From positions 20,584,001-20,648,000 of the forward strand of contig NC_059438.1 of the NCBI RefSeq assembly GCF_021028975.2: a DNA stretch of 64,000 nucleotides. Reading direction: 5' to 3'. The DNA comes from Sphaerodactylus townsendi (taxonomy: Eukaryota). The notes beneath the pieces were generated by a model, which was not told the DNA's origin, searched no databases, and saw only the letters and a program-made list of their open reading frames with translations. Shown here one piece after another: positions 3,484 to 51,023 of the stretch. The translations under genes were made by a program, and so were the position numbers. Positions within the stretch are counted from its first letter, which is position 1, and each line of letters opens with the position of its first letter.

Positions 3484-3759
3484 AAGAAGAAGAAGAGTTG
3501 GATTTATATCCCCCCTTTCTCTTCTGTAAGGAGACTCAAAGGGGCTTACAATCTCTTTTCCCTCCCCCCCAACAAACACTTTGTGAGGTGGATAGGGATG
3601 AGAGAGCTTCAAAGAACTGACTAGCCCAATGTCACCAAGTGTTCGAGTGCACAAGCTAATCTGGTTCACCAGATAAGCCTCAAAAGCTCAAGGGGCAGAG
3701 TGGGGAATCAAACCTGGTTCTCCAGATTAGAGTGCACCTGCTCTTAACCGCTACACCAT
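3484..3759 (-). mobile_element. Same tRNA-derived SINE, reverse orientation
   Basis: Reverse complement of 522-829 with a (GAA)n tail. Confidence 0.8.
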
Positions 3760-6230: not shown

Positions 6231-9200
6231 CATCTGAAAGCAGACAGCAATTGCTGTGAGCCTTCTTCAATGTAAATTCTATTGGGCTGCACAGTGTGCA
6301 CTGATCCCCACAATTCAAATGGTGTTGGTCCTACAAGCTAGAACTGGACTGTTTGATTTCTAAATCCATTGTTCAATGGCAGATGCAAGATCTGAGCTGA
6401 GCTCAGCGTGTTTTTCCTTCTCCAGTTGCAGGACCTACTGTGAGGCCTTTAGATTTGTGAATCTCACCGTCACCTTCTCTCTTTCTCACTCTGTTCTCCA
6501 CAGTGGTTGGCCTCATGCCCCAACATCCGTACCACTTCCTCGAGCTCGGTCTCCTGCCTGCACATGACTGATACCTCTGTGCATGAATCCTGAGGGCTCC
6601 TTATGAAGATGGATTCACAGTTCACACCACTGCTGCCCCCTTTTTATTTCAAATAAATAAATTGCCTGTCATTTTCAATTTCTTCCCGTTGTGGTTTTTT
6701 CCCCTTCCCCATCTTCAGTTTTTCTTTCTTTCGCCCGGCATCGCCACTGAAGCAGACACGAGCCCCGAGTGCAGTTTTCTCAACAGTAATATGAAAGGTT
6801 TGCTCTCGAATCAGTATCACGTTTTCATGAAGATCCGTTTTACTGCTGTTAGTTCATATTCAAGTCAAGTCAAGTCAAGTAGTATTTATTGTTTGAGCCA
6901 TTGGCTATAACATCCAAAAATACATACAGTTAAAACATTCAGATTAAAATAATAAACTTATCTTTAGGTTACAATATAAATGATTTATTCTCACTATATC
7001 CGAATTAAAATGCCCCATCAAATACTTCCCATGTCGGGTGTTTTTACAGCTTCTTCATACTAAACTAAGTTGACCACAAGCTCATTGAATCATCAGTTCA
7101 AACAGTGCTTTAAATACTCTGCTCGCATTTTCCTAGCTGCCAGTTCATATTGATAGTAGTCAATGTTTTTAAAATATTTTAAATAATTTTTTACTTTTGT
7201 GTTGTTATAAATATTTTTTTAAATTTTTTAAGAATGATGCAGTTGTGCTGAGATGGTAGAATGGGGGAAAATACACGTAAACATACCTGTTTAAGACAAC
7301 AAGGTGTCATAGGAAAGACTTTGTTCCAAACAGGAGTAATCTCCTCAACTGAACCATCACACCACCGTTTTGCAGCTTTGACAAGAAAGCTCAACAACAG
7401 CCCACACACGGTGACCAGGGAGATTAGGGTTGCCAACCTGCAGGTTATCCTCCTGGGATAATGATTGATCTCTAGGCAACAGAGATCAGTTCACCTGGAG
7501 AAAACAGCAGAGAAGATGGACTCTGTGGTGTTATACCCCATTGAAATCCCTCCCTTCCCCAAACCTCTAACTGTTAAGATAACTTTATTCACAACAAATC
7601 TGAATGCTGGGTAAGTATTCCCCCGCTTCTCTGAATGATGGATATAAAAGCCAAAATACACAATACACATGACCTTGAGTTGGGATACTCACAGGCGTCC
7701 ACCCTGACTCAGCCAGATGTTCACACAACAGCTTTAAAACTTCTCAATCCCTCCTTGTGGCTCATGTGCTGTGAGGAAGATGGGGTGGGTTCAGGCTTCT
7801 CCTCTGCACCATTTGAGACAGGATGCTTTTTTGGCCTTCCTTGGGCTCCGCATGCTGGGATGGAAGGGGCAAACTGCTTTTTTTTCACCTGTAACTGACC
7901 TGACCTTTCAACTGGGTGAAGGGCCACCTTCTTTAGGATCTGATGGATGCTTGAATGGAGTCATAGTGGACTATCAGAACCAGTGTAGTGTAATGGTTAA
8001 GAGTACTGGAGACCCAGTTTGTCAGTCTGTGAGACCCAGTCTGTGAGACCCAGTTTGAGTCCCCACTCATGGCATGGAAGATGGCTTGGTACCTTGGGTC
8101 AGTCACACTCTCTCAGCCTAGCCTACTTCACAGGGTTGTTGTGAGGATAAAATGGAGGAGAGTAGAATGATGCAAGCTACTTTGCGGAGAAAGGCAGGGT
8201 AAAAATGAATTAAATAAATTAAATTAAATTAATAAATAATGTTAAAGAAATATCCGTAGTAGTTAAGGAATGTTAATGTTCTTTTTATGATAGGGCCTGG
8301 ATCCAGTCTCCTTAAGCCAAAATAGTTATACTAATTATTGTTCTTATGATTAATGCACTGTTCCTTGTTGGGAAGATATAGGGTTGCCAACACTAGCATC
8401 AGGAGATTCCTGAACATCTGGGGGCAGTACCTGTGGAGAAAAGAATCTGAGGAGAGGTTTCACCTAGAATCTATGGTATACCATTGAGTTTGCCTTCTGA
8501 AGCTGCCATTTCCTCCAGAAGTGATTTCTGTAATCTGGAAATCTGTTGTAATTCCACAACTCCAGGGCCCATCTGGAGATTGGAAACCCTAGGAGGCGAG
8601 CATCCCCCACCCCCCAGACATGTTTCACAGATGAAAACAGAGATGCTCTGGTAATCCTCCTGTTCCAAAGGATCAGGGCTTGATCCCCCTCCTACCCTTA
8701 CGGTTTGTCATCCTTACCTGCCTTGGAATCATAACCTTCCCTCTTTTTTTTTAAAAAAAATCAGTGTTTCATCTCACAGTGGCCCTGGCTGCAGCCTGCA
8801 GGTATTAATAAACTGCACCAAATCATACCCATTCTGCAAAATGTAGTCTGCACCAAGATAGGTACGGAGAAGGACAGATAGAAAACACAGTGGTGCATGC
8901 ATTGGACTCAAGCTACATCTCCTCTCAATAATAAGGTCTCAGGGACGACCAAAGCCAGAGGAACTCAAGGGCACATGACTGACAACATTTGCAAACTTCT
9001 GCCCCAAGACAGAAACAGTGGTTGTTTTTTTTAAACAGGGCAGATCAGAACACAGGAAGGATCAGAGCATAGAGTGAGTGAGCTTTGTCCACATCTGCCT
9101 TTAATTTGCTTCTTCCCTCCCTCCGAAAAGAGAGGCAGTCACACTTCCAGCATCCTGTCCAAACCCCTCCTCTTCTCTCCCCTGAACCAATGACACTGAG

Positions 9201-9477
9201 ATCACCATTACAGAAATACTTTGCTATTCTGGCTCCGCGCACCCCTGTGCAAGTGCCGGAGACGGTTTGCTGGGCCTTCTCATCCTCCATTTTCTCCCCC
9301 CCACCTTCAAAGGACAGATGGTACATTCCTCTGGTACAGCATTCAGACTAGAGATCCATTCTCTAGTAAAGAGCTGCTGGCAACCCAGCGTCTGCTCGCA
9401 GAGAGATCCCCTCCGGCTGGGCAGAAGCGATTCCAGAGCCTGGCACCGACCCCTCCCCCATCTCACTCCAGGGTGGC

Positions 9478-12400
9478 ATGACACTTTTTGGCAGCAGAGA
9501 AGCGTGCTGGAGATGTAAGTACCGACTGTGCTCCCCTGATCCCATTGTGTGTGTTCTGCATGCATTTTTTCTTGCTGCCTTTCAACCCCCCAAAAAAACA
9601 AGATGGCAAAGATGCTGTCTCCAGAAGGCAAAATGAGTGGGGGGTCTCAGAACTGGTGACGCCCCCCCATCCCCCACAGTCCTCGCTTGAACGCTATGCA
9701 CACGGAGATGTTGTTCCCAAGGGTTAAAAAAATGGGGGTTATTTCATTGCATTTTGATTGGAGTGTGAAGGGTTTTTTGTTGTTGTTGTTCCGGCTTGCA
9801 AATGGAAGCTAGCAATTCTGCAGAAAATGTCCCTCACTTGCTGGAAGAAAGTTAGATTGGAAGGGGAATGAGAATGTGGAAGGTCTGACTGCCCTGGAGC
9901 CGTTCCAGAGATGGTTAAGGCCACTGGGGTAGTGTGTTTTGCACCGTGGGCTACCAAAAACAAACCAGAAGGGATCCTCTTGGAGGTTTGTATTTGAAAC
10001 TCAAAATAAATTGACACAGGATGCTGATCCATAGGGACGTTCAATTAAATTTTTTTGTTCTTCCATTCGGGGCATTCTTAGCCTATATCATGAAGATCTC
10101 TCTTCCCTATATATATGGGGAAATGATCTGTATACCATAAATTTGTATGCCAAATAAAGCATCTTCGGAACTGAATGGAAAAAGAGAAGCTAAATCAAAT
10201 GGGGCTCAAGGCAGAGGGATATTGTTTGTAGTTCTGCCACTAACTCACCATAGGGCCTTGGGCAAATCCCTTAATGTCAGATTTCTAAGTATGCCTTTTT
10301 TAGATTTTAGATGCCTGAGCCCAAGTTGCAGAAGTGCTGGAAGAATTTAGTATCAATGACAGTAGCAACTACCCCACATTTCTGGCAGTCACGAAAAAAC
10401 TGTCTCAGGCAGACAGGAATCCCATTGATGTGGGCTCTGGTGTCTAGAGGGGACGTGGGGGAGGAGCATTTGTCTGGGCAAATGAGGGCTGAAGTCGGAG
10501 AAAGCAAACTTCATTATACCTATTAAATGTTTCCAAATGGCAACCCCTATTCTCCTGTGTTACATTAATTCTCTGGTCCTAAGTGTATTTACCAGAGATA
10601 ACTTATGCTGACTTCAAAGTGATTATTTGCACCAGAGTAAAATATGTTCAAGCTTTGCTACTGTAATTAAAATTTTAATTGAAGGTGATATTCTGTTCAT
10701 TTAAAACAGCTGCAAGAACTAGGAGCTGGTGTTTTTTTTGAACGAAGAATTATTCTTATTTTTATATGGCAACTTTAACATGCACGGGGCTTTTCAGAGT
10801 AACAAGACAAAAAAGCCCCTGCCCCAAAGAGCTTACAATCTACTATTTGCATCAGGGGAGGCAAGAGAAGGTGGGGTAAAAGACAGAAGCAAGAGTAAAC
10901 AGGAATCTTTCCTGGTCTTTCTAATAGGTTTTGCCATTAATTTGAGCCATGGGGATGAGTGGATTTTTTTGTGGGTGAGTCAGCATTATGAGTGAGCAGC
11001 GGTCTCCTTGCTGTCCCCTTTGGCACCCCCTACACTGGTATAAGTGCCATCTCCCGGAATACCACCCAGATTTTTTTTCATGAGCCTGAAAAGATGAATT
11101 CTCCTACCTGTGAAGCTGCAGACAACTGCATGACCTTTGAGACAGGCCTTGCAAGTTTGTTGGCATCATTTTGCCTGCTTCGTGGAGAGCCATCCTGAGC
11201 AGTGCCTTCCTCACCATCCCCACCTCTCCTCTGCTGTTTCTCCCTCTTTGTCACATTTTCCTTTTTTCCTAGATCCAGACATGGCCCAAGAACCTAAGCT
11301 GAGCCATACCCGGTCTGGTCAGAAGAGGCAACATAGTGGAGGCCTGTACCAGTGAGTTAACGTAACAATTCTTCATGTGGGGAAGGATGGTGAATAAGGA
11401 TGGGTCCGTTTTTGGAAACTGGAGATGCTCCGCAATTGATGGTCAAAAGGCTAGAGATGAATGAAGAATTTGTTCATAATTAGTTTCAGGAAGGTATACT
11501 CTGTTTCAGATAAAGTTGTTAGTACGGTCAGTTGAGATGCAGCCGTCAAGAAAATGGTATGTTTTCACATTAGAATATAGTCCCGAATGCATGAGTATTT
11601 ATAGTTCATTGAACGACTATCGTAAAACTTTCAAACGGATAGGGGGGAGCAAGGCTAGGTAGGCACTAGGACCCAGGGAGAGCATTCTACAACAAAGAAG
11701 GTCCGGCATATTGAGTTCTGTGGCGGAGGAATATGCAATCTACTAACATCTTTTTGTGAGACAGTCTATAGCCATGTTGGTCATCTGTTAGGGTTTCCTG
11801 GTCCCCTCTAGCCTCCAGCTGGGGCCTAGGATTGGCAGCTCCAAGTTGGGGAACTCCAGGAGATTTGGGGGTGGAACCTGCGGAAGACAGGGACCTCAGC
11901 GGGGTACAATACAGCAGAGTCTACCCTCTAAACCAGAGGCGTTCCTCCCATTGGGCAAAGTGGGCAGTTGCCCAGGGCGCCAGCTTGTGGGGGGGCGCCA
12001 AAAATGCAGGTGGGATTTTTTTAAATTTTCAGTGTTTTTTTCTGTTTTTGGCCTGCAGGGGGTGCAGTTTTTAGGCTAGCAGCACCAAAATTTCAGGGAT
12101 TTTTCGGGAGACTATCCTAATGATATCACCCAGGTTTGGTGAGGTTTGGTTTAAGGAGTCCAAAGTTATGGACTCCCATAGGGAGTGTCCCCATCCCCCA
12201 TTGTTTCCAATGGGAGCTAATAGGAGATGGGGGCTACACCTTTGAGGGTCCATAACATTGGACCCCCCGAACCAAACTTCACCAAACCTGGGTGGTATCA
12301 TCAGTAGGGGCTCATGAAGATACTCTGAAATTTTGGTGCTGCTATCTTAATAATTGCACCCCTGACAGCAGGCACACCCTAAATTGCCCCAGATTCTCCT

Positions 12401-15400
12401 TTTAAATCCACCCCCTTCCTGCCAATGCTTGTTTTCTTTCTTTCTTTCATTCTTTCAATGCCTACTAAAGGTTGTTGTTGTTGTTGTTGGGGGGGCATCA
12501 AACGCAGGTTTTGCCCAGGGCTCCAGTTTGCCTAGGTACGCCACTGCTCTAAACCATTCATTTCCAGGAGATTTGATCACTGTGGTTTGGAGATGAGCTG
12601 CAATTCTGGGAGATCCCCACATCCCCATCTAGAGGCTGGCATCCCTATCTGCAGTAGCTTTGAGTCCCAGCTTATACTCTGCAAATATTGTTGATCTCCA
12701 ATGTACTACTGAACTCAGATGTAGATCTTCACAATTAGGAAAAGGAGGGATTTTGGTGGCTAGAGTTGGACCTGCTCAGAATAACTGGGACGCTCCTGTC
12801 TTTTCAAATCAGCATACCAACACATGAGCTTTTCAGGAGTGTGTGTAAATAACCAGGATAGGAACAGGGAGTGTCATGGCCTCAGCGTGGAACATCCAGT
12901 TCCCAGGTTCAGGCTCCACGACTTTCTTCAACAGCAGTGAGGCCCATTTCATGCAGAGATGGAAATATATCCTCCCCCCCATCCTCATAAAGATCCAAGA
13001 GCCAGTTTTTTGTTGATGCGTCTGAAGATCAATGGGTATCTTTTGAAACAAAGGAATTTGGGTCTTGCAGGCTCAGCAGTCATAGATCTGTGCATAAAAT
13101 CAGAATAGGCAGAATGTCAGATGGGTCTGGCCAGATGTTTGTCTGTCACAACAAAATAAAGTAACAGTCCAGTGCCAACTCCAAGGCTAACAATATTTAT
13201 TACAGCACATATGATAAAGTGAACTCTGACTCACAAAAAGGTATACTGGAATAAATGCACTCCTGCCCGGGTCCCTGTGTGCGCCCCCCCGTGCCCCACT
13301 TATGGGAGCCAATATGGAGGCCGGGGATTGGGGGGGCAGTTCAGATTGGTGCCATGGGGCTGCCCGCTGCTGAGCCCCGCCTGCCGTCCTCCCTACAGGC
13401 CAGCGCAGGAGCCAGCCTGCAGGGGGGGCGGAAGGGCGAGGTTCGGCAGTGGGCGGCTCGGGTGCACACCGCTTTGTCACGTGGCAAAATGGTGTGCGCC
13501 TGGCAACATGGGATACCCCATGTCCCCATTAGCAGTACACTACTGAATATATTTTAAGTTGCCACTGGCCTTGTGAAGAAAAGGAAGAGTTTTCATACCC
13601 CTCTTTTTCTCTAACTTGAAGTCTCAAAGTGGCTTATAATCGCTTTCCCCATCCTGCAACAGACACTTTGTGAGGTAGGTGGACTGATAAAGAGTTTGGA
13701 GAGAATTGTGACTAGTCCAAAGTCACCCAGCAGGCTCCATGTGTAAGAGTAGGGAAACAAACCTGGTTCACCAGAGTCTGCCACTCATGTGGAAAAGTAG
13801 GGAATTAAACCTGGTTTCATTCCAGATTGGAACCCACTACTATTAACCACTGCACCAGGGGTGGGCAATTATTTTTTCCATGGGGCTGCATAAGAAACAG
13901 AAAATATTGTGGAGGGCCGGGCCAAAAGGCTGAACTCAATTCTGCATAATAGGGGCTGATAAGTGACAGACAGGTGCACAGATCAACTTGGAATCAGTGG
14001 CAACAGTTCTGCATACAACACTATTTGGCACAAAGAATCACAGGCTTAACCTACCTGCATAGTTGTCCACTGTGACAAGCAAGCAAGTGGGGAGACTTAA
14101 GTCCCTTGACCTACCTTTTTCATCGACTGGTGCTTTTGAAAGCCCCGCAGAAGCCAGTTGCCTTGGTTGCCAGCTTCTGCGGGGCTTTCAAAGGCGCCTC
14201 GCTCCCCAGCAAGGCAGGGGGGCGAGGCGCTTTTGAAAGCTCCACAGAAGCCGGCAGCCAAGGCAACCGGTTTCTGCGGGGCTTTCAAAGGAGGGGAATG
14301 CCCCAGAAGCCACTGTGCAAGGGGAGTGGCCTTTCTCAGAGGCCGTTTCCGGCGCAGTGGCAAGGTGAGGGGGGAAGGGGGAGGGTTAGCGGAAGAATGA
14401 GCGGCGCGGTTCTAAACAGGTCCTCTTAGGCCAGGGCCAGGTCTGTCATACGGGCCAGTCAGGGTCATCCAGCGGGCCGGATGTGGCCCCCGGGCCGTAT
14501 AATGCCCAGGTCTGCACTACACCATACTGGCTCTCCTGTCTTAACAACCAGAAAAAAAGAAAGCAGAGATTAAAGAAATTGCCGTTTCACCAATAGTTCT
14601 GGCTGTGATCGTACATGGCCATTGTACCCCTATAGTAGTTACAGGAACCACATGTGAAAATCCTACAACCCTTGGTTCTCAGCCCCTGGCTGGCTGACCT
14701 TGGAATTTAGAATAGAAAGCTAATTTTAGTCCAGATATGCTGATAACAACTGCAAGGGTTTGTGCCTTGAGTCTTTCTTGCTCTTTCCGTATTTCGCCCA
14801 TGCGAAGAAAATTCCCAGGGCTAGTCTTGATTTAGCATGTGACATATTTCAGCCCAGTGTGGCTTAAAAACTAAGCTATCTACTACGCTATGAGGTAGGC
14901 TTTGCTGTTCTAATTCACAAGCAGAAAGAACCGCAACTGCTAATCACCAAACTACTGTGCTTACTGAGAGATTCATGCGTGACTTCAATGTGAATATCTG
15001 CTTGACAAAACCTAAACAAAGACATCTCCCCGAAAGCAACCTGAGAAATGTAATTCTGTAAGCTTAGGGAACACTCAGCATAAAATCCCTGTGATCTTAA
15101 CCCTGGTTATGGCATTGGAAGCACATCTGTAATATAAATGTGCGCATTATTAGGCATGTTTGACACTTATTCCAGTCTCTGTCTTGGCTGCACATATGTT
15201 TAAGTGTCATAGGTTAGTGCAGAAAGCAAAGCACTTTTAGTTCAATTCAATTCAATAAGCCTTTATTGGCATATACACGATAGTATAAAAATACAGTTCC
15301 AGTTAAAAAGTGAATAGTAAAAAACTTCGCGTTTGTCATACATTCAGTTTACAAACTTCTGACAAAAACTTTGCCACTATAAGGCAACAATGAAAATCCT

Positions 15401-18400
15401 GACAATTTAAAAGCATAACTACTTTATCTGATTCAGTATAATCAATCATAGGGTCTATAGCTTGGGATAGCAGGCTGGATTGGAGTTCTTGGTATAATAA
15501 GCAGTTCAGGAGAATGTGTGGGATAGAATCCAGCTGTCCTATGCTACAGGTACAGAAACACTTTTAGTTCTAGGCTTGCTCCAGTGTCTTGAAGCAGCAG
15601 CTGAACACCCAGAAATTTAGAAGGTGAAACATTTATGAGCATGGTGACAACCTGATAAAACTTCACCCTGTTTCATTTTTTCATTGGTATGCTTCTATTT
15701 AAGACACAGGAGCTGTAGGCTAAGGGAGAGGGAATGACTGTCCCATATACTCAATGGCAGGGAAGGATTTGATCTGGATCCCTCCAGTCCTAATCCAGTC
15801 TCCCTATTCCACAATTCTTTATTGCAAAGAAGAAGAAGAGTTTGGATTTATATCCCCCCTTTCTCTCCTGTAGGAGACTCAAAGGGGCTTACAATCTCCT
15901 TTCCCTTCCCCCCTCACAGCAAACACCCTGTGAGGTAGGTGGGGCTGAGAGAGCTCTGAAGAACTGTGACTAGCCCAAGGTCACCCAGCTGGCATGTGTG
16001 GGAGTGCACAGGCTAATTTGAATTCTCCAGATAAGCCTCTGCAGCTCAAGCAGCAGAGCGGGGAATCAAACCCGTTTCCTCCAGATTAGAATGCACCTGC
16101 TCTTAACCACTATGCCACTGCTGCTCCGGCATATGTGTGCTTTAACAAATGCTGACACAGAATCTTCAAAGCCTTGTTTGTTTGTTTGTTTGTTTGTTTG
16201 TTTGTTTGTTTGTTTGTTTGTTTGTTTGTTTGTTTGTTTGTTTGTTTGTTTGTTGTGGTCTGCTGACCCACACAAGTAAAACAATTATGTACAAATCGTG
16301 GAAAACAATGACAGTTGAACTGAGCGGCAAATAAATTCTGTAAACCTGCTCTAGAAACAAACTATTAGTCAAAGTCTTGTTAGCAGCAAATGTATCTAGT
16401 ATTACTATTTTTAACCTATTTAACTATTTTTAATATGCCAAATGCTGACCTCTCAGCAGCAAGGTAGGGAGAAAAGAGCCAGTTGCTTCTCTGGAATATC
16501 TTGTTCCCCCATTTTTTCAGAAAAGGACAAACTGAGTCCTGTTTTATCACAGCTTTACAGTTTGGCTCCCACTCAATTGGGGTTTCTTCCGTTGCCAATA
16601 CAGCAGATTAGTACCCTGGGATTAAGGGGGTTTGTTGCATGTATTTATTTATATAGCTGGTAATGAAAATTATTTGGCTGCAGCTGTTTCAGTCATGAAG
16701 GCAATAGGCTGCTTTTCCATCTCCTAGGTGGAATATGGGAGTAACCAGCCAACAGTAACCACAGTCTAATCTTTCCTTGTGTCAAGAGCTGGCCACAGTT
16801 TGAACATCATTGAAAAGATCAGGTGAAGAATAGAACTGGAGCTGTAGTACAGGCAAGACAGGACAGGGTACAGAAAACAAAGACCCTACAGAAAGTAAGA
16901 GAACAGGAAAGATCAGGAATGGGGACTGGGAATGAAACACATAACCCAGGTAAGGGTCTTAGAAAGAGAGTTCACACAGTTGTCAAAAAGAACAAGAAAA
17001 GGGAGTTGGAAGCCACCTATGCTGCTCTTTATGAGCTTCATGGAGAAAGGGATGAGACAAATGAAGTTATGAATTAAAAGTTCCATGCCTCAAACAGTTT
17101 GTTTAGCCAGCCATCCTTATTGTTTCCTGAAGAGTACAAAACCCTGATTTGGGTGGCCCAGGCTAGTTTGATCTCATCAGGTCCCAGAAGATAAGCAGGG
17201 TTGACATCCATTGCAATGGCGTACTTAGGAGGGGAGAAAGGGGGCAGATGCCCCAGGCTCCACTTTCAGGTGTGACGTGGGGGGCACAGATCAGCCAGTT
17301 CTCCCTCCCCCATATCACTGTGGGGGTGGGGACAATTTTACTGTTTGCCTCCAGGTACTATTTGCTATACATACGTCACTGGCTGGTACTTGGATGGGAG
17401 ATCACCAAGGAATATGAGGGCTGTTATGCAGAGGAAGGCAATGGCAGACCACTTCAGTTAGTAGTTGGTGGCCTTGAAAACTCTGTAGGGTTGCCATTCG
17501 TTGGTTGTGAGTTGCTGGCACTTTACACATCCACACAAGATTAGGGGTGGTCTTTAAGTCATGTTTCTACCAAGCAACTGTTTTGGTTATGTTCTAGATT
17601 TTCCTCTCCCTTTCCATTCTCAAGGGAACATCTGTATTCTATACATTCATATCAGTTTTATATGATCTGTCTGTCCCAGCTCCCCCCCCCCCAAAGGATC
17701 CTGGGAACTGTAGTTCACTGAGGGTGATGAGAATTCTTTGTCGGAGATATTCCATACACAACTGTGTTTCTCAGGGTTTCCTAGACATAGGGAAAGACTG
17801 TCAAAACAAAATAAGAGCATAATGTGACCACACCTAAAGCAGTGTGATGAGGGGAGGGTAAAATGATTGCTGAAAAATGCTTAAATGCTCAGGTGCCGAA
17901 CAGCTGCCTTACAGTTCTAAATGGTCCTGCTGACAAGCTAAGAGATGGGACCAGCGGCCTAACAGATGGAAACTTGGAAAACAAAAGGACTGAACAAAGA
18001 GTCCCAAAATAACTTCCAGGGGAAAACAATAGCCACCGCACAACAGCTTTTCCCAGATTCCTGGCTTCAGCTCTTCCTGTGCCTGCCAGTATGCCGCCTA
18101 AACGTGCCTTTAAAAGGAGGAGTGTTGCTATTGCCGGCCGGCGTGACCCATTGTTAAATCCCTCGGACATACCACAGGTATCTTTGTCCTGGAATCCACA
18201 GCTACCCATCTGGGGAGGTAACTCATCAAACATTCCCAAGCTTTCAGATCTCCCTTTCCATTTGGGCGCAGCGTGGATTTGGCACTTCTGAAGTGTTGGG
18301 CTCTTCCCAGACATACAATAAAGCCTGTGAAAGAGGAATAGGAAAAATATAATTCATTCTGGCCGGATCATTCACAAGCAGCCCCCTCCCTACTGCTGCC

Positions 18401-21400
18401 TCGTGTGTCTAATGCCATGCTTTCTCTCTGAGGCTGTTGTTTACAAGAGCTTACGCTGCAATAATTTGTGACCATGAGCGTTGCTGCTATTGGGTGCTAT
18501 CTGCTAAATGCAGCTGCTCTCTTAGAAGTGGCCCTTGAATTCTTTGGTCTGCTGGGGCAGAGGAGCAAGGATGTGACTCAGAGGAAAACATGCCGAAGCA
18601 CAGCTGCATGTGTGTTCTGCTCCCAAAATAATCACGAGCGCACACAGACCTGTGTGCGTATATTTGGCAGAATTTATCCTGCTTTTGCTGAGGGCAAAGA
18701 GGTCTGCCCACTCACTGGAAATCCTACAAGAGCCTCCATTCAAGTTTTTGAAACTTTGCCAGGCGTTTCCAATGCACTTTCAAAACCTGTTCATGTGGTT
18801 ATCAGGATTAAAAACCTGCTTTGCTATTTTGCTTTTTGTGGTAGCTGAATACTCAGAATGATGAATTTTGCACACATTTTTGATACCAAAAATCACCGTG
18901 ACCTGCATAAACCCACAGAGGAATTGAACACAGGAGATGCGATATACTGAGACAGAACACTTGCCCATCTATTTCACTCAGCCAAGTTACTCTCATAGTT
19001 AGTAGCTCTCCCATACAAGAGAAACTCCTCAAGGAGTGCTCTAAGAAGCTCATGTGCATACGGAGTCCCCTCCCCCAGCCATTCAAGATGTACAAATGAA
19101 ACTCTGTTTGAAGTTCCATCTTATATGGAGGTTTCTGCACAAGAAGCAGGGCCTCTTCTGTGGTAGCCCCAGAATTCTGGAATGTTCTTCTGCAGCAGTT
19201 ACATTTGCTCCCCACCCTTGTTGTCTTTTGGAAGCAAATTAAGACCTTTGTGTTTCACCATCTTTGGTTATCTTTTTTGCTCTGCTGTTTTTGTTTTAGT
19301 TTTAAGCTATACTATTTTTAAAAAATATTGTGTTTTGGTTGCTTTTAATTTACTTTGGAACTTTGCACTGGAAAATGGTAAGAAAAATCTTGTAGAATAG
19401 GATAGGATTATCCCATAGCCTCTTTTACCTTTCCAAATACAGCCATTGGCTTCAAAGAGCCAGGAGGTGCCTCGTTTGAACAAAATTGTCCTTAAATGTC
19501 ACCTCAGGATCATTTTGACTTTGTAAGGCTGAGACAAAGAAGAAAGTGCAGAAAAAGGACTTGACAACTCTCCGAACTACAGATTTGTCAGCACGGTTCC
19601 CTGATTTAAATGACAATCGAGGGAGCCACTATAGGGAGGACAAAGGCACAATCCAAAGAGCGCACTGCACGGTGGCAGGGGCATTTCACCGCAACAATTG
19701 CTGAGTAGAAAAAGCTAGGCAAACTCTTCTCTTTTGCCGTCAGCACATAAGCTGCTGAGATTGATGGCAAAATCATACCGAGGGGGAGAGGCTTCTAGGA
19801 GGAAGTGAAGCTGAAAAAAATTTCAATTATTCTGCAAAACATTCCAAGCATATGTCTGGCAACTCGGCTCCCACGCACTCCCTTGTGGGTTGACAATCAC
19901 TTTCCAGCTACATGGATAGAATTTTTAAAGAAAACTTAACTTGAATATGTGACCCAACAAAAGATGGCAGGAATGCAGCTTCCTCAAAAGAACCCCTGCC
20001 CCTCAAATTCTGGGCATATTTCTGGGTGATGAAGTGGCTTTCCCCCCTTTTTTTGTGTAATCTGTTGTGTGGTGGAAGGAATTGCAGGGAAGAAAAGACT
20101 GTCACATGCAGAATTCAAGCTTATTCCAAGACAGGGCCCAAACCAGCTTATTTCCTAGGGAATCAAATTAAGCTGTTAAATCAAACGAAGAGGGGAAGCC
20201 TGTATCCTCAAATAATTGTGTAGAAAAGGGAATGTTAGCAGGTTCTCTTTGCTGCATTGCACCTGTCAAAACCTCCTCTTCTACAAGGATATTAAAGCCC
20301 CATTCTTTCCCCATTGTCAGCTATCACTGCCCAGTACCAAGTTGGCCCACAAGTATTTCTCCAGAACCTTCCTTCTTCCCCCAAAGTGTGACAGGCATGT
20401 CAGCTTCCTTCAGGCAGGTATTCTTGCAGATAGCTTCTTCATTCGGATCTGAGGGGCAGACACTTTGTGAGGCAGAACTACCGACCGTGAAATTTAACTT
20501 CGAAAATCTCTAACTGAAGATCTGCAGAGTGACAGGGCCCGTTCCGCTCCTGCAGGGACGAGATTCTTCATTGAAACCCAAAGCAGCTTCACCCCAGAGT
20601 CTCAAAGAAGATGCTAAGGCATCCCGGGTGTGAGATCTAGGGAACCCTGAAAAACCCCTTTCTTCACACACAATTCTTGTAGATTAGCCCCCTTAAAGAA
20701 CTCCAGGATTTACCTTCTCATCTCTTCAATCTTCTCTGGTATTCCAGGGCAGATTTTACTTCAAAAACAAACTGAATCAGATAAGAACACACAAATGCCC
20801 CAAATCTGAATTGTGGAGGTTGATTGATCTGATATCACTTTGTTCGCTGTACACAATATTCTGTCACATACCCACAAGGTTTACCCGTTCCAAAAGGCGA
20901 AGTATTCTTTCTTCTTTTGTAATCTTCCCTTGATTTTACAAAAAGAAAAAAAGAGTCCTAGTGGTTTCTGTGGTCCAGAAGTTAAAAAGCTGTGATATGT
21001 GTGAAGAATTTGCACTGAGGTTGTAACTTGAGGTCCATTTGAGAAAAGAAAGGGAACATGTAAACTGCAAAAGACTAGCAAAACTTACACAGGTTGAACA
21101 CACGAAGTTCACAGGTTGAGCATGTCTTTGCATGTGGAACACCCCCACCCACCCCCCAAATTCAAGCTGTGGCATCTCCAGCTAAAAGCCTCAAGGATAG
21201 CAGATTCAGGGAAAGACCCTTCTACCGAAGACCCTGAGCGGTCCCGCCAGTCAGAGCAGACAACATGAAACAGGATGAACTAATGATTTGACATGGTATA
21301 ATAGTGGGTGGGTGGACTGCACATTAGTCAACCAATCCACTCAGCATCCAAGGCTAACACACTTGTATAAATACAAGGTTTCTTTCAACCATTTTTTAAT

Positions 21401-24400
21401 AATGTGAAAATATTTTAAGTTTGTTTACAAAATGTGGAAATTAATTTCCACATTTTGTAAACAAACTGAAATATTTTCATATTGTAAAAAAAATAATTAA
21501 AACAAACTTTGTATTTATACAAGCGTGTTTGCCTTGGGTGCCAACTGGATTGGTTGACTAATGGACATGGTGTAAGGCAGCGTCACGTGCAAGTTCTTAC
21601 TATATAAGATGGTACCATTTGAGAAGTGACAGGGTGACTAGTTTTGGAAAACTTGAAAGTGGTTTGCATTGAATTACCTGCATTCTTTCTCCTTTTGCAA
21701 CAGCTGTGATCTGGACTATGAAGTATACAAAGAGGATTTTCCATACAGGTAGGTTTAGTCCTTTGGCCTCCCCCCCTTCAGTATCTACTCTTCCTATTCT
21801 TTGGGTATCATCACAGTGAAAGATAACACAATTTTAACCAATTACAGGCCTTAATATCTACCCTCCTTTAATACGAGCTGCTATATTTGAAGAATTGTCA
21901 AAATGGGCTTTCTCCCCATCTTCTCCTCTGTAGGGTCTATGAATACCAGAAGATCCCTCCTCTTATCAGTCATATCCCTGTCAAGACCAAGCGAAGCCAC
22001 CTAGGGTCTGGGGGCAAGAGCGCTCTGGGCCCTCACACAGGGTTGAGGAGCAGCAGCAACTCCATGGCAGGCCGTACAAAGTGTGAGTGTTTTGACAAAA
22101 AGACTATGGAAAGGGTTTTTGATGTCAAGGTCCCTTGGGTCATCTTTACTGTTAGCCTATTTGGCATGGTGGTCCTTCATTTTATCCTATCCTACCACCT
22201 CTATGCTATATTTGTCTTGTAACAGCAAAGCCGCTGGCATAGATTAGGCTGAGTGAGTGAAATAACATAGAATATTCACTAACATTCCAATTGCTTGCTG
22301 GACAAAACGGTGAGTATGCAGTTCAGCTTCTCTGAGGTAGGGGGAAGCCTTCAAAAATCGAAAGGAAACCCAGTAAGAAACAAGATGTGGATTGCTGCAA
22401 GCTCCATATTGAAGTTTTACAGGTCCTGCAGAATTGAGATAGATCCCTCAGGGCCCAGGTCTCATTTGAAAAAGTGTTTCGCCAGGCTGGGGCCAAAGTT
22501 GAAAAGGCTCTGGTTCTGATTGAGAACACCCAGACACTTTTCGAGCCAGGCAACGCCAATAAGATGTTATTGGCTGAGCATAATGCCCTTGGAGGTATAC
22601 TGGGTCCTCTGCCACCTCATAGGACCCACCCCCTCATTCAAACTTGCCACCTCATGACTTCTGGGGGAGATGGTGCTTCGGTTGCTTTGAGCTCTCTAGA
22701 GCTCCCTGCCACACATTACTGAAAAGGGCAATTATGCCTGCATAACAGCAGACAGGTTTGACTATAGCCTCCCTAGGAGCTCTGGGGACCTTTAGTTTGA
22801 CAGGGGAATTAGTCAATAGAGCCACTAGTTCTGGAAACATCCAGGATCAGTAGGTATGAGCTTTCGGCTTTCAGAAGTAGACTCCCCGACCTTTCCACTC
22901 ATTAGTTCCGTTTTCCCTGTGGTTTTTTTTAAATTTTCATTTGTTTCTAATCTTTTATTCTTAAATCCTTTTTAGGTTTTTGTAACTCTTTGTGAAAAAT
23001 AATTTTTTTTAAAAAAACCCTTGCAGCCTAATTAGCCTGCTTTTGGCCTTTTTAAAGAAGTCAGTTTTATGACTTCCTAACACACGTGCCAGTGATTTAT
23101 GATTTTCCTTTCCATGACAGACAAATGAACTGCAGTCACAATTCTGTAGCTCCACCCCTCTCCCTGGGCATTTGAGAAGTAGTGATAGTATAACTTAACC
23201 CAGCCATGCCATATCTTTGCAGTACGAGCAGAAGAGCTACACTCCATCAAAGGGGAACTAAGTCAGATCAAAGCCCAGGTGGACAGTTTACTGGAGAGCC
23301 TGGATCGGATGGACCAAAGGCGGGAGCATCCGACAGGTGAGGAGATTTGCATGTGTTTAAGAAGCCAGCATTGTCTTATTGCAGAATTCAGTGTATGAAT
23401 TAACACCTCCTCCCCCACCCCTCAGCCTCAAAGCAATTGGGCGTCTTCCACCTTGGTAATACTCTCTGGTATGTTTTTCATTTGCATTGTTTTCCAGTTC
23501 ATCAGTCCCAGTCTCCACTTCGAGATCTTCACTTTGATAGAATTGTTTTTAGTTATATTTCATAGTCTGCCTCAAATCTCCATGAGAAAGGCAGGTTATA
23601 AATGAAGTTCATCAATATTATATTTAGCACCATCGTTATGCCTGACACTTTATAGTGTAACATATGAAAAATAATAATAATTAAAGAGAGTCCCTGCCCC
23701 AAAGAGATTACAGTCTATTTACAGCATGGGAATAGCAACAGAAGGTGAAAAAGGAGAGAAAACTATGCATTTACCGGTATGTAGTGGTGAAAAGGAAGCA
23801 GTGTTGCCCAAAAAAGAGCTTGCAAAACAAATAGGTTTTAAGGACACAAATACAGCAGGTACTCATAACCGTTTCAACATGCAAGAAAGTTGTGGCGCTT
23901 AGAAGAAGAAGAAGAAGAAGAGTTTGGATTTATATCCCCCCTTTCTCTCCTGCAGGAGACTCAAAGGGGCTGACAATCTCCTTGCCCTTCCCCCCTCACA
24001 AAAAACACCCTGTGAAGTAGGTGGGGCTGAGAGAGCTCTGAGAAGCTGTGACTAGCCCAAGGTCACCCAGCTGGCACATGTGGGAGTGCACAGGCCAATC
24101 TGAATTCCCCAGATAAGCCTCCACAGCTCAAGCGGCAGAGCTTGAAAAATATCCAGTTCAAGTCAACATTTGGGGCAATTCTATAGTGGCAAAATGCTGC
24201 ATTTTGGCAGTGTAACATCTTTGCAAACACAGACCATAGATAATATCTTTTATGTTCTTATCAACATTTTATTTATCTATTTGAATATTTTTAGTCTTCC
24301 TCCCCCGCCCCCTGCCCCATAGGGCCTCAAGGCCTACCCTGCAGGATTACAGATAATTTTAGCCAGCTTCACAACAGATTTGTGAGGCAGGCTAGGATGA

Positions 24401-25904
24401 GAGACAGACTGGCCCAGTCATCCAGTGAATTTGAAGACATGATCAGCTATATTGAGTCTCTTCAACTTCAGTACTGCCTGGTCTTTTCAACTGGAAATGC
24501 TGAGGATTGGACCAAGGACTTTCTGCATGCCAAGCAAATGCTGTACCACTGAGCCACAGCCCCTCCCTTAGCCAGCTTCATGACTGCGGGGAGATTTGAA
24601 CCAGAATGTGCCCAGGGCCAGCACAACACTGTATTACACCACACTCATTATATAGACGTGGTCTTCGGGAAGATGTCTTAGAAGCTTAGGGGGGTTTGGA
24701 GGCTCTTCAGCACTTTTCATGCACCCAACATAACTTTGCAGGCCTGAGCACCCTTCTCAAGTGCTCGCACACAACTTCACTAGGCCTAGGAAACTTATCT
24801 GGTGCTACCACCCACCTCTGAATCACCCTCCTCCTCCTCCCGCAGGTTCCAAAGAAGGCAAGAAGAAAAACCTCTCCAGTGGGGAGTCTTCGTATTCACC
24901 TAGTGATACATCCCAGAAGAAGGAGAGCGCAACCAACGACAGACACACTGCTACACAGGAGGTCGACAGTGCCGACGAGAGCACAGATACCGAAGAAGCG
25001 GTAAGGAGATCACACCGAGCTTTGCCCTGCCAGAGTGAAATCTCAAAGATAAAATAGGCAGAAAGAAATGTTGTTTCCCTCTCTCGTGGAAATTCAAGTG
25101 TACTGAACCATGAACAGTGATGATATTCCATGTTCTACCAGGCAAAGAGACAACAGACCGCATCCAGTGGTAGGATCCAAAAATGTTAATAACAGGTTCC
25201 AATGGTGGTGGGATTCAAACAGTGGCGCCGCCGCACACACGCACCTCCAGTCCCTATTGGGCAGGGAGGTTGCTTTAGTAACCCCTTCTCGGCACTCAGA
25301 AAAAATTAGTAACCACTTCTAGAGAAGTGGTGAGAACTGGTTGGATCCCACCTCTGACCGCATCTACCATATAGTCACCAGATCTAGCCGTGACCTGACT
25401 GAATCAGACCTTCCATGGCTGTGATATTCCTACACCAAACAGAATTGCCCACCTATCCAGAATGCTTGCCATCCTTCTAAATAGATGTTGCAGGACAGAG
25501 TGAATAGTCCCAGCACACACCCCACCGTTGCACCTGAAATTTTGAGATTATTTATGTCCATCCCACCTTTCTCTCCAATGGGGACTCAACTTCTCACTTC
25601 CATTTTATCCTCACCAAAGCCCTGTTAGGCTAAGAGTGCGTGACCGCTCCCAAGGTCACCCAGCAAGCTTCCTTGACGGTGTGCGTGTGTGGGGGGGGGG
25701 GGGGGGGTTTCCCAGTTTCTAGTCTGATACTTTTAACAGCTACACCACGTTGACTCCTGTATCTCCCCACCCCAAACAATCCCATCTGCAAACTGTGGTT
25801 TTAAAAATCCCAGAGTTGTGACTTCTGAAGAGAAGGGTGGATAAAAGCATCTTGTTTCTTTGCAGGCAAGAAATCACAGGTTGGATCCCGAGAGCAGCCA
25901 GTAA
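9478..25904 (+). CDS. hnRNP C / RALY / RALYL-family protein lacking an RRM in this window (205 aa; 190 aa from the Met at 11281)
   Basis: join(9478-9514,11273-11351,21704-21748,21934-22082,23223-23336,24846-25000,25866-25904). All introns are GT-AG, phases 1,2,2,1,1,0, total 618 nt. Protein: MTLFGSREACWRYPDMAQEPKLSHTRSGQKRQHSGGLYHCDLDYEVYKEDFPYRVYEYQKIPPLISHIPVKTKRSHLGSGGKSALGPHTGLRSSSNSMAGRTKLRAEELHSIKGELSQIKAQVDSLLESLDRMDQRREHPTGSKEGKKKNLSSGESSYSPSDTSQKKESATNDRHTATQEVDSADESTDTEEAARNHRLDPESSQ*. It matches family motifs DIN(L/M)AxEPK, DLDYDxxRxDxYxR, PxKRxR and the zipper [30 protein letters not shown]. The first exon (9478-9514) is less certain than the rest. Confidence 0.85.
11934..12546. 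mobile_element. hAT-type non-autonomous DNA transposon with a long internal inverted repeat, nested in an older MITE (about 11789-12648)
   Basis: Perfect 8-bp TSD CTCTAAAC (11926-11933, 12547-12554), termini CAGAGGCGT...ACGCCACTG, internal arms about 12050-12370. Confidence 0.85.
13856..14514. mobile_element. hAT-type DNA transposon inserted in a reverse tRNA-SINE (about 13587-14535)
   Basis: TIR CAGGGGTGGGCAATTA / TAATGCCCAGGTCTG; TSD CACTGCAC / CACTACAC. The SINE resumes after the insert. Confidence 0.85.
15828..16127 (-). mobile_element. Full-length tRNA-derived SINE, reverse
   Basis: Reverse complement of 522-829. Confidence 0.85.
16174..16254. repeat. (TTTG)n microsatellite
   Basis: About 20 tetramer units. 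Confidence 0.97.
17146..17525 (+). mobile_element. 5S-rRNA-derived SINE with a nested small DNA element (about 17214-17381)
   Basis: 5S-like head (gatctcatcag..agaagataagcagggt...gtacttggatgggag) and Sauria/BovB-type tail (gaggaaggcaatggcagaccac). Nested piece has termini CAATGGCGTA / TACGTCACTG. Confidence 0.6.
21322..21563. repeat. Spacer-less 242-bp inverted repeat (121-bp arms)
   Basis: Centre GGAAATT|AATTTCC at 21442/21443. Arms run cattagtcaaccaatcca...tggattggttgactaatg. Confidence 0.92.
23902..24143 (-). mobile_element. tRNA-derived SINE, reverse, 5'-truncated
   Basis: Reverse complement of the 3' part of 522-829 with a (GAA)n tail. Confidence 0.85.
25165..25356. mobile_element. hAT MITE (CAGTGGT[A/G]GGAT family)
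   Basis: Perfect TSD ACCGCATC; TIR CAGTGGTAGGATCC / GGATCCCACCTCTG. Related copies at 45885-46022 and 58457-58593. Confidence 0.85.
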
Positions 25905-26215
25905 GTCCTTCAGAGCACCGTAATCCCTTGCCCTGCATTCCCTTACCTGTGTTTTGTATTTCTTTCAATGCGTCGAAGTTAAACAGTGCTTTAGTTACGT
26001 CAGCAATCGGTTCTGGTGCGGAGAAGAGCAAGGATTGAGCCCCGATCAACCAGCTCCTTTCTCCGGTCTGGAAGAGAGGCGAGAGATTCGTAGGACGTGC
26101 AGGAGAGGAAGCAACGTGTTCTTTGTTGTGAAAACTTAAATATGCCAACCTGGGAGGAGGGTGGGAAAAGCAGGCAATAAGAGGGCCCAACTGAACCTGC
26201 CCACCATGAAACAGA

Positions 26216-26221
26216 AATAAA
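26216..26221 (+). terminator. Candidate polyadenylation signal for the RALY-like gene
   Basis: AATAAA about 310 nt after the TAA at 25902-25904, followed by a GT-rich stretch (tgtgttgtttaggtgtgtgg). Confidence 0.5.
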
Positions 26222-26842
26222 AACAGTAGCAGTCTCCTATGGCTATTATGTGTTGTTTAGGTGTGTGGCTTCGTAAATATCCTGGGCAGCCATTAACTTT
26301 CCTGTCTTATGTCACATCAGAGATGCTTGCATTCTACTCTCACATCTTATTAAAACATTTTTACCTTGCCTTTCCTCGTGGTTCAAGGAGGCGTACAATA
26401 CTAGTGGAAAACATTTTTAGTTTTCAGTCTCCCACACGGACCTTGTGATCGGCTACTTCCTAAGATCCGTGTCTCGAAAACGACCGGATAAATGACTAAG
26501 CAGAGCACTTAGCTGAGGCGTGAGACTGTCGATTATTTGATCGCAGTCCATGAAACCAAGAATACCCTCATGTAGGAGTCGGCCTACCTTTTAAAAAATC
26601 ACCTTATAGCATCGTCCAACAACAAATGGAGGCATCTGTTATCTGACTGCACTGCGGAAGTATTTTGGATCAAAGGCTCATTATTGAGAGCTCAGGATGT
26701 GGTGGGCTGCCCCTCTCCCTCCAGCAGAAGAGCCTCTCCCAGGTAGCCACATACCCCATCCAGAATCTTCCCAGCAAGGCCGCTCTGTGGTTGGGAAACC
26801 ATCTTTTAAAGACGGTCTCCTCCTCAAATAATGAGTCTAGAC

Positions 26843-30152: not shown

Positions 30153-30290
30153 GGTCTCTCCGCGAACCGCGCTCCGGAAGGGACGCAGCGGGGAACCTCC
30201 CACCGGCCGGCCCGCGCGCGCCCTCTGGCGGCTCCCGCGTGTACTTTCAGAGAGCGAATCGTAACCGGAACCACTGGGCGCTGCTGGGGA
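29300..30290. promoter_or_regulatory. CpG island covering the EXOSC6 CDS and promoter
   Basis: Very high GC and CpG density compared with the rest of the window. ETS-like CCGGAA motifs near 30174 and 30265. Confidence 0.85.

Positions 30291-32385: not shown

Positions 32386-51023
<18,638 letters not shown>

What the first reader, a model, noticed from the sequence alone, without database searches (positions are those of the whole stretch)
9478..25904. RRM-less paralog of the hnRNP C/RALY/RALYL family: a possible zipper-only modulator of hnRNP C-type oligomers
Seen: seven small exons, absent from the ORF track or present only as unlinked fragments, splice in phase into an intact 205-aa protein. 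It carries the post-RRM linker (DMAQEPK), a DLDYEVYKEDFPYR motif, a basic PVKTKR segment, a clean heptad zipper (LRAEELHSIKGELSQIKAQVDSLLESLDRM) and an acidic tail. I found no RNP1/RNP2 exon (VFIGNL, KGFAFVQY) in 1-11273. Established: hnRNP C tetramerises through this leucine zipper, its basic region and PSKRQR-type NLS precede the zipper, and the recalled HNRNPC exon layout matches the one here. Inference: the protein is too divergent to be HNRNPC, RALY or RALYL and sits at none of their mammalian loci, so it may be a fourth family member (ohnolog) lost in mammals. Lacking the U-tract-binding RRM, it could hetero-oligomerise and change the valency or specificity of hnRNP C-type particles.
Basis: partly seen in the sequence, partly recalled or inferred. 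Interest (0 to 1): 0.85.

Follow-up and report, generated by a model that had tools for sequence, protein, structure and literature searches.

The report
RRM-less hnRNP C-like gene, already annotated
The seven exons are a real gecko gene, conserved under selection, for a 205-residue relative of the RNA-packaging protein hnRNP C that keeps the self-assembly zipper but has no RNA-recognition domain; databases already list it across reptiles, birds and many mammals under a misleading name, but I found no study of it.

Summary
Observation confirmed. The seven exons (9478-25904, +) have canonical AG/GT sites and fitting phases and sum to 618 nt. Each exon is 100% identical, in order, to RefSeq XP_048372044.1, 'RNA-binding Raly-like protein' of Sphaerodactylus townsendi (205 aa).

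- **No RRM: supported.** Sixty orthologues have no RRM hit. Spliced transcripts of relatives carry in-frame stops before the conserved MTLFGS start. The window has no RNP1-like motif.
- **hnRNP C zipper: supported.** The only solved-structure match is the hnRNP C tetramerisation helix (1TXP, E 3e-7).
- **Selection:** dN/dS is 0.13-0.14 overall and about 0.02 in the zipper exon.
- **Separate locus:** the gene lies beside EXOSC6 and AARS1 in geckos and dog, so it is not RALY, RALYL or HNRNPC by position.
- **'Lost in mammals': refuted.** Platypus, marsupials and many placentals have it. Only haplorhine primates and Mus/Rattus are missing from the hits.

Function is inferred: a mostly disordered, probably nuclear protein that oligomerises through the zipper. 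A four-copy model scored 0.64 against 0.11 for the best control, but this may echo 1TXP. Co-assembly with hnRNP C or RALY is untested. The gene is annotated, misnamed and apparently unstudied.

The parts
9342..9514 (+). Exon 1: 5'UTR (at least from 9342) plus the start codon at 9478. It codes MTLFGSREACWR and one further base (phase 1). Donor is GTAAGT.
   Evidence: Transcript L001 positions 1-150 align collinearly to 9342-9514. There is an in-frame TAA at 9367-9369 and no in-frame ATG between it and 9478. The MTLFGS start is conserved in squamates, turtles, crocodile, birds, platypus and marsupials.
11273..11351 (+). Exon 2: homologue of the post-RRM linker, (Y)PDMAQEPKLSHTRSGQKRQHSGGLY(H).
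   Evidence: AG/GT sites. L001 151-229 aligns exactly to 11273-11351. 100% identical to P0080 residues 14-38.
21704..21748 (+). Exon 3: acidic-aromatic motif CDLDYEVYKEDFPY(R).
   Evidence: L42, Y44, Y47, P52, Y53 and R54 are invariant or nearly invariant in 60 orthologues.
21934..22082 (+). Exon 4: the VYEYQKIPPLISHIPVKTKR motif, then a basic stretch free of acidic residues (residues 67-104: 7 K/R, 0 D/E), which may act as an NLS or RNA-binding region.
   Evidence: Y58, Q59, I61, P62, P63, L64, I65, P69 and K71 are invariant or nearly invariant.
23223..23336 (+). Exon 5: leucine zipper (L)RAEELHSIKGELSQIKAQVDSLLESLDRMDQRREHPT(G), homologous to the hnRNP C tetramerisation helix (CLZ).
   Evidence: PDB 1TXP is the top hit, E 3e-4 for the single exon and 3e-7 for the profile. 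AlphaFold2 gives a helix at 106-138 with pLDDT 85-98. dN/dS is 0.015-0.02. The exon is 93-99% identical to birds, turtles, crocodile, platypus and marsupials.
24846..25000 (+). Exon 6: variable Ser/Lys-rich spacer followed by the conserved acidic cluster DSADESTDTEE.
   Evidence: D182, S183, T188, D189 and E191 are nearly invariant. The cluster fits the S/T-x-x-D/E pattern of CK2 sites (my inference).
25866..26363 (+). Exon 7: the last 12 codons ARNHRLDPESSQ, stop TAA at 25902-25904, then the 3'UTR to about 26363. ATTAAA lies at 26349 and AATAAA at 26216.
   Evidence: L001 683-1166 aligns to 25865-26363. Poly(A) signals come. The C-terminal ..NH..D.E.SQ is conserved across amniotes.

Best explanation
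The locus is the gecko (Sphaerodactylus townsendi) copy of a distinct protein-coding gene of the hnRNP C/RALY/RALYL family. The gene is single-copy in most species and sits beside EXOSC6 and AARS1. It is conserved across amniotes, with a likely coelacanth relative. It encodes everything that follows the RRM in hnRNP C-type proteins, but no RRM: the linker, an acidic-aromatic motif, a basic NLS-like stretch, the CLZ-type leucine zipper and an acidic tail. Shown here: the gene model, the absence of an RRM, homology of the zipper to the hnRNP C tetramerisation helix, purifying selection and the synteny. Inferred: the protein is largely disordered and nuclear, and it assembles through its single helix into an antiparallel coiled-coil oligomer like the hnRNP C tetramer. 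With no U-tract-reading RRM, it would act in one of two ways. It could form an RRM-free homo-oligomer that contacts RNA only through its basic region. Or it could co-assemble with RRM-bearing C-type subunits and lower the number of RRMs per particle. All hydrophobic core positions of the zipper match hnRNP C, so co-assembly is plausible but untested.
For: - **Model:** all seven exons are 100% identical to XP_048372044.1. The junctions match transcript L001.
- **No RRM:** 0 of 60 orthologues hit RRM_1 at E<=0.1. None of the listed orthologue clusters has a precomputed Pfam domain. Transcripts L001, L003 and L004 have a stop 0-2 codons before MTLFGS, and L002 has one 41 codons before it. The window has an in-frame TAA 37 codons upstream, inside the stretch collinear with the transcript 5'UTR. 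The window has no RNP1-like motif.
- **Family:** 1TXP (hnRNP C CLZ) is the only PDB match of the profile, E 3.1e-7, with I, L, I, V, LL, L at matching core positions.
- **Selection:** dN/dS is 0.144 (dS 0.45) and 0.127 (dS 0.90); for the zipper exon it is 0.015-0.021.
- **Descent:** the gene tree follows the species tree.
- **Locus:** the order gene(+), EXOSC6(-), AARS1(-) holds in the window, in Heteronotia and in dog.
- **Structure:** one confident helix at 106-138, the rest at low pLDDT.
- **Oligomer:** four copies of residues 96-146 scored 0.64 against 0.11 for the best of 3 controls. The three runs agreed in at least 81% of contacts, and partner pLDDT was at least 69. In the tool's calibration the mark was reached by 21 of 30 proteins solved as pairs of one chain and by 0 of 23 solved as single chains. 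The contacts are antiparallel, for example 116 with 127 and 113 with 130.
- **hnRNP C domain roles:** bZLM, CLZ and NLS as described in PMC8994388.
Against: - No RNA reads of this species were available, so its own junctions and expression rest on RefSeq's model and on relatives' transcripts.
- The complex prediction may simply recall 1TXP, and its calibration was for two copies, not four.
- No gene tree with HNRNPC, RALY and RALYL could be built, because the paralogues could not be fetched. 'Fourth paralogue' therefore rests on locus, divergence and architecture.
- Nuclear location, RNA binding and any partner are untested.
- Placental copies evolve faster (zipper 75% identical to gecko, long branches), and at least one (naked mole-rat, P0034) looks degenerate. 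The function may therefore be dispensable in some lineages.
Confidence: 0.75

Rival explanations
1. Autonomous RNA-binding oligomer. The protein does not modulate hnRNP C or RALY. It forms its own homo-tetramer and binds RNA through the basic stretch next to the zipper, as the bZLM does in hnRNP C. It would then be a sequence-unspecific RNA packaging or chaperone factor with its own targets.
For: In hnRNP C the bZLM (residues 140-214), not the RRM, is described as the major determinant of high-affinity RNA binding (PMC8994388). Residues 67-104 here have 7 K/R and no D/E. The homo-oligomer model passes its controls. Surface residues of the zipper are almost invariant over about 300 My, which fits a dedicated interface.
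Against: The basic stretch is only moderately conserved (mean majority frequency 0.64; 35-67% identity to non-gecko groups), and by my recollection it is less basic than that of hnRNP C. No RNA-binding test exists. The zipper core is identical to hnRNP C at every hydrophobic position, so mixed assemblies are not excluded.
Confidence: 0.3
2. Short isoform of a longer RRM-containing gene. The RRM exons lie upstream of the window or in the 2402-2646 gap, and the 205-aa product is only an alternative-promoter isoform.
For: The window starts only 9.5 kb upstream of exon 1 and contains a 245-bp gap. Family members can have very long introns. The coelacanth model P0178 is cut at its N-terminus and begins DINVAGEP, like the end of an RRM.
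Against: None of more than 100 annotated orthologue clusters has an RRM. Four assembled transcripts from three samples start in a 5'UTR collinear with the DNA just upstream of exon 1 and have in-frame stops before the ATG. The start codon and the 12-residue N-terminus are conserved across sauropsids, platypus and marsupials. No gene is called in the 10 kb upstream in dog or Heteronotia.
Confidence: 0.04
3. It is simply RALYL (or RALY or HNRNPC) of the gecko, as the database name suggests.
For: RefSeq and UniProt call it 'RNA-binding Raly-like protein' or 'hnRNP C-like'.
Against: These names are assigned by similarity. The gene lies between unrelated neighbours (EXOSC6, AARS1) in gecko and dog. 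From established gene maps (my knowledge, not tested here), RALYL, RALY and HNRNPC lie at 8q21, 20q11 and 14q11 in human, and AARS1/EXOSC6 at 16q22. It has no RRM. Its zipper is only 15/26 identical to that of hnRNP C.
Confidence: 0.02
4. A decaying, functionless remnant of a partial duplication.
For: It lacks the family's signature domain. It is missing from the hits for haplorhine primates and Mus/Rattus. Some mammalian models look damaged (P0034).
Against: The reading frame is intact in dozens of lineages. dN/dS is 0.13-0.14 and about 0.02 in the zipper. The zipper is 93-99% identical between gecko and birds, turtles and marsupials. Spliced transcripts exist.
Confidence: 0.02

Closest known systems
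hnRNP C1/C2 (HNRNPC), in particular its bZLM/CLZ region and the solved tetramerisation helix 1TXP
   Same: The zipper aligns over 26 residues with all hydrophobic core positions identical (HSIKGELSQIKAQVDSLLESLDRMDQ against [26 protein letters not shown]). It is preceded by a basic P-x-K-x-K/R-R stretch and followed by an acidic tail. It is predicted to form an antiparallel helical bundle. The domain order after the RRM is the same (PMC8994388).
   Different: It has no RRM and is 205 aa rather than about 300. It has its own conserved 12-residue N-terminus (MTLFGS...), its own invariant YEYQ(K/R)IPPLI motif and its own C-terminal end. It lies at a different locus (EXOSC6/AARS1). Its surface zipper residues differ from hnRNP C but are nearly frozen within this family.
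RALYL and RALY (RNA-binding Raly-like protein; RALY)
   Same: The annotation pipelines name this gene after them, so they are its best named database matches. The coelacanth relative begins DINVAGEP, and gecko exon 2 begins (Y)PDMAQEPK. By my recollection of the family these resemble the DINMAGEPK linker that follows the RRM.
   Different: It has no RRM and a different chromosomal neighbourhood. A direct alignment or tree could not be run, because no RALY or RALYL sequence could be fetched with the tools.
Natural dominant-negative subunits that keep an oligomerisation helix but lack the nucleic-acid-reading part (for example Id proteins among HLH factors); an analogy of mechanism only
   Same: The assembly domain is retained and the specific nucleic-acid-binding domain is lost. 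Such a subunit could poison or retune complexes of its full-length relatives.
   Different: The fold and family are unrelated. A basic region is retained here, so RNA contact may persist. No heteromer has been shown.

Membership tests
hnRNP C / RALY / RALYL family | N-terminal RRM (RNP2/RNP1) that reads U-tracts | tested here: not met
   0 of 60 orthologues hit RRM_1 at E<=0.1. The window has no RNP1-like motif in any frame. Transcripts have in-frame stops before the start codon.
hnRNP C / RALY / RALYL family | CLZ-type leucine zipper homologous to hnRNP C residues 180-207 | tested here: met
   1TXP is the top hit for the single exon and the only hit for the profile: E 3e-4 (single exon) and 3.1e-7 (profile of 60).
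hnRNP C / RALY / RALYL family | Basic, NLS-containing stretch directly before the zipper (bZLM architecture) | tested here: met
   Residues 67-104 (HIPVKTKR...GRTKL) have 7 K/R and 0 D/E. P69 and K71 are nearly invariant. NLS or RNA-binding function itself was not tested.
hnRNP C / RALY / RALYL family | Acidic C-terminal domain | tested here: inconclusive
   There is a conserved DSADESTDTEE cluster (6 D/E in 11 residues), but the rest of the tail is mixed (7 K/R and 6 D/E in 139-181) and much shorter than I recall for hnRNP C.
hnRNP C / RALY / RALYL family | Tetramerisation through the zipper | tested here: inconclusive
   The four-copy model scored 0.64 against 0.11 for the best control, with antiparallel contacts. 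This is supportive only and may reflect memory of 1TXP. No biophysical data exist.
hnRNP C / RALY / RALYL family | Groups with the family in a gene tree, as a separate fourth branch rather than inside RALY, RALYL or HNRNPC | not testable with these tools
   Paralogue sequences could not be retrieved. The word-index search with the coelacanth N-terminal part returned only itself, and orthologues fill the hit lists.
hnRNP C / RALY / RALYL family | Shared exon-intron layout with HNRNPC, RALY and RALYL | not tested
   No paralogue gene structure was available. Within this gene's own orthologues the junctions are conserved. The zipper exon of an unidentified species (L008) ends at the same ...HTG position.

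The most novel reading that the evidence does not exclude
This is the fourth whole-genome-duplication copy of the hnRNP C/RALY/RALYL gene. It shed its RRM before amniotes radiated and has been kept for over 300 My as a zipper-plus-basic-region subunit. It co-assembles with RRM-bearing C-type proteins and sets how many RRMs a tetramer carries, acting as a natural valency modulator or dominant negative of the RNA 'length ruler'. Its apparent absence from haplorhine primates and from mouse and rat would explain why it has never been studied.
Probability: 0.2. Interest if true: 0.8.

Novelty: new variant of a known kind. Interest (0 to 1): 0.55.

Why it matters
hnRNP C tetramers package nascent RNA, measure transcript length and police Alu exonisation. 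Their behaviour depends on four RRMs held by one zipper. Many amniotes, including chicken-like birds, dog, pig, horse, lemurs and reptiles, carry a strongly constrained relative that has the zipper but no RRM. A subunit of this kind could change RRM valency or compete for the same partners, and it has gone unnoticed in the human- and mouse-centred literature. The case also shows that the database label 'RNA-binding Raly-like protein' covers two different genes in many genomes, which can confuse orthology tables and expression studies. The practical value is modest until a function is shown, because the gene model itself is already public.

Tried and rejected
- **RNA evidence in this species.** The look-up of sequencing runs returned only four DNA runs of one study and no RNA run. 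I therefore did not use read laying, which could not have shown junctions.
- **Joined 205-aa model.** I neither built nor searched it. Exons were searched one by one by reference, and the comparison with P0080 was made per exon.
- **Pfam on single exons.** This gave only weak coiled-coil noise such as BLOC1_2, far below its cut-off. I rejected it as meaningless.
- **Fetching RALY, RALYL and HNRNPC for a family tree.** The search with residues 1-85 of the coelacanth protein found only its own cluster. Orthologues saturate the other hit lists. No paralogue tree was made.
- **Coelacanth locus.** It is not on record, so I could not see whether that copy still has an RRM.
- **Turkey locus.** AARS ends 392 bp from the gene, but two 100-N gaps flank the gene and EXOSC6 is not found there. 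I did not use it as proof of a bidirectional promoter.
- **Conserved upstream blocks between the two geckos.** Introns align at the same 70-80% identity as these blocks, so they say nothing about hidden exons. The stop-free stretches upstream show nothing RRM-like.
- **Earlier notes of this scan.** Nothing near this place, and nothing for the family words.
- **Literature.** Three searches found nothing on this gene, and a search for the SRA accessions found no paper.
- **Human.** I fetched and compared no human sequence. Absence from haplorhines rests only on the species names in the hit lists.


Full report
**What is in the sequence**

Reading the DNA directly gives seven + strand exons. They are 9478-9514, 11273-11351, 21704-21748, 21934-22082, 23223-23336, 24846-25000 and 25866-25904. 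Each acceptor is a pyrimidine tract ending in AG, and each donor starts with GT. The lengths add to 618 nt and the phases fit (1, 2, 2, 1, 1, 0). The result is 205 codons and a TAA stop. Every search used single exons by reference.

**Identity of the model**

I searched the zipper exon alone against 1.84 billion representative proteins. It found 44 proteins at E<=0.001, eight of them at E<=1e-10. One later hit, P0080, matches all seven exon translations at 100% identity, in order, at positions 1, 14, 40, 55, 105, 143 and 194. P0080 is XP_048372044.1, 'RNA-binding Raly-like protein' of Sphaerodactylus townsendi, 205 aa.

**Is it really without an RRM?**

Several independent lines say yes.

- None of the orthologue clusters listed in two searches has any precomputed Pfam domain.
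- A direct Pfam scan of 60 orthologues found no RRM_1 at E<=0.1.
- Four assembled, intron-free contigs from three public samples (L001, L002, L003/L004) carry the whole reading frame, so they are spliced transcripts. In L001, L003 and L004 a stop codon lies 0-2 codons before the conserved MTLFGS start. In L002 it lies 41 codons before, with no ATG between.
- L001, from a related gecko, maps on the window in seven blocks that reproduce the six junctions. Its 5'UTR is collinear with 9342-9514 and its 3'UTR runs to 26363, just past an ATTAAA at 26349.
- In the window an in-frame TAA at 9367-9369 lies inside that 5'UTR-collinear stretch.
- A loose RNP1 pattern finds nothing in any frame of the 64 kb, and the stop-free stretches upstream show nothing RRM-like.

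No RNA run of this species was on offer. The gecko's own junctions therefore rest on RefSeq's model and on relatives' transcripts.

**Family relationship**

Against all solved structures, the zipper exon's best hit is the hnRNP C tetramerisation helix 1TXP (E 3e-4). For a profile of 60 orthologues it is the only hit (E 3.1e-7). Fifteen of 26 residues are identical, including every hydrophobic core position. The rest of the protein follows the order described for hnRNP C after its RRM (PMC8994388):

- a linker;
- an acidic-aromatic DLDY...Y motif;
- a P-V-K-T-K-R basic stretch with no acidic residue (7 K/R in residues 67-104);
- the zipper;
- an acidic cluster, DSADESTDTEE.

The family's defining RRM is absent. 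I therefore file it as a variant of the family, not a regular member. I could not fetch RALY, RALYL or HNRNPC sequences, so there is no tree with the paralogues, and the exon-layout comparison with HNRNPC stays untested.

**A gene of its own, under selection**

- **Synteny.** In the window the gene is followed by a single-exon EXOSC6-like gene (29292-30203, - strand, RNase_PH E 1e-29). After that come AARS1 exons on the - strand from 32387 to 51020. The same order, gene(+), EXOSC6(-), AARS1(-), is seen in the gecko Heteronotia and in dog. A bird-like transcript contig ends in EXOSC6 coding sequence on the opposite strand. By established gene maps (my knowledge, not tested here) this is not the neighbourhood of RALYL, RALY or HNRNPC.
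- **Selection.** Nei-Gojobori estimates from per-exon codon alignments give dN/dS 0.144 against L001 (dS 0.45) and 0.127 against L002 (dS 0.90). The zipper exon gives 0.015-0.021. The zipper is 93-99% identical between gecko and birds, turtles, crocodile, platypus and marsupials, and 75% identical to placentals.
- **Descent.** A maximum-likelihood tree of 60 orthologues follows the species tree. Placental branches are longer, and the coelacanth protein sits on a long branch at the base.

**Distribution**

Orthologues are annotated in squamates, turtles, crocodile, birds, platypus and marsupials. They are also annotated across placentals:

- afrotherians and xenarthrans;
- carnivores, bats, a mole and a pangolin;
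- horse and rhinoceros;
- pig, camel, goat, deer and whales;
- hare, many rodents including a gerbil, and a colugo;
- strepsirrhine primates.

'Lost in mammals' is therefore wrong. With a lemur query all 99 hits were listed, and none comes from a haplorhine primate or from Mus or Rattus. This suggests loss or non-annotation there, but the word-index search does not prove it. I looked at no human sequence. A partial coelacanth protein (P0178, starting DINVAGEP) is the most distant relative found. It fits a pre-tetrapod origin and leaves open when the RRM was lost.

**Likely mechanism**

AlphaFold2 with the 60-sequence alignment gives one confident helix, residues 106-138 (pLDDT 85-98), in an otherwise low-confidence chain (mean pLDDT 60).

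Four copies of residues 96-146 scored 0.64 against 0.11 for the best of three controls. The three runs agreed in at least 81% of contacts, and partner pLDDT was at least 69. In the tool's calibration the mark was reached by 21 of 30 proteins solved as pairs of one chain and by 0 of 23 solved as single chains. The counts hold only roughly here, because the calibration used two copies. The pass may also be memory of 1TXP. The closest contacts pair residue i with roughly 240-i, which means antiparallel packing as in hnRNP C.

My best reading is a nuclear, disordered protein that oligomerises through this helix. I cannot decide between two versions of its action. In one it forms its own RRM-free particles and touches RNA through the basic stretch. 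In the other it joins hnRNP C or RALY subunits and lowers their RRM count. The identical core favours the possibility of mixing. The nearly frozen surface of the zipper within this family favours a dedicated interface.

**Novelty and verdict**

I searched the literature three times and found nothing on this gene. Databases hold it only under similarity-derived names that collide with true RALYL. It is a real, conserved architectural variant of a well-known family. It is already annotated but apparently uncharacterised. The 'lost in mammals' claim is wrong, and the functional idea is still open.

Noticed in passing
window 29292-30203 (-): A single-exon, GC-rich ORF of 303 aa with an RNase_PH domain (E 1.3e-29). 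It is 64-85% identical to the EXOSC6 genes called in dog and Heteronotia. It lies convergent with the gene studied, about 3 kb from its poly(A) site.
   Followed up: partly
window 32387-51020 (-): About 20 exon-sized tblastn matches (50-94% identity) to dog and turkey alanyl-tRNA synthetase (AARS1). Gene order matches dog and Heteronotia.
   Followed up: partly
window 61788-62195 (+): An ORF fragment with a weak short-chain dehydrogenase match (adh_short, E 2e-5, below the curated cut-off), probably one exon of an SDR gene.
   Followed up: no
window 9318-9518 (+): An upstream ATG opens a 66-codon ORF in another frame that overlaps the main start codon. Its first residues (MVHSSGTAFR) recur as the N-terminus of the Varanus komodoensis model, where the ORF is in frame. 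It may be a conserved uORF or alternative start, but transcript L001 begins downstream of it.
   Followed up: partly
window 16174-16254: A perfect (TTGT)20 microsatellite in intron 2.
   Followed up: no
window 3483-3758, 15824-15966, 23901-24043: Copies of one interspersed repeat, SINE-like, that also occurs at least six times in the 45-kb Heteronotia locus L009.
   Followed up: no
window 2402-2646: An assembly gap of 245 N, about 7 kb upstream of exon 1. I left it as it is.
   Followed up: no
L008:765-935 (Logan contig of SRR24765303, organism unknown): An unspliced contig holding a lone zipper exon (EELQTIKRELTMIKVQIDGLLDSLDRMDRQRQEHTG) that ends at the same ...HTG boundary as gecko exon 5. 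It is more divergent than any amniote copy and may be a non-amniote orthologue.
   Followed up: partly
alignment A1, columns 178-200 (exon 1 equivalent): In placentals the MTLFGS methionine is replaced (for example AVTLLR in elephant, AVRPLG in lemur). Models then start either far upstream in GC-rich sequence or at the Met of DMAxEP, so the N-terminus seems to have been remodelled in placentals.
   Followed up: no
hit list (Rhea pennata): Rhea pennata has one model on a 24.5-Mb contig and three further related models on a 9.5-Mb contig. This could be a lineage-specific duplication or an assembly artefact.
   Followed up: no
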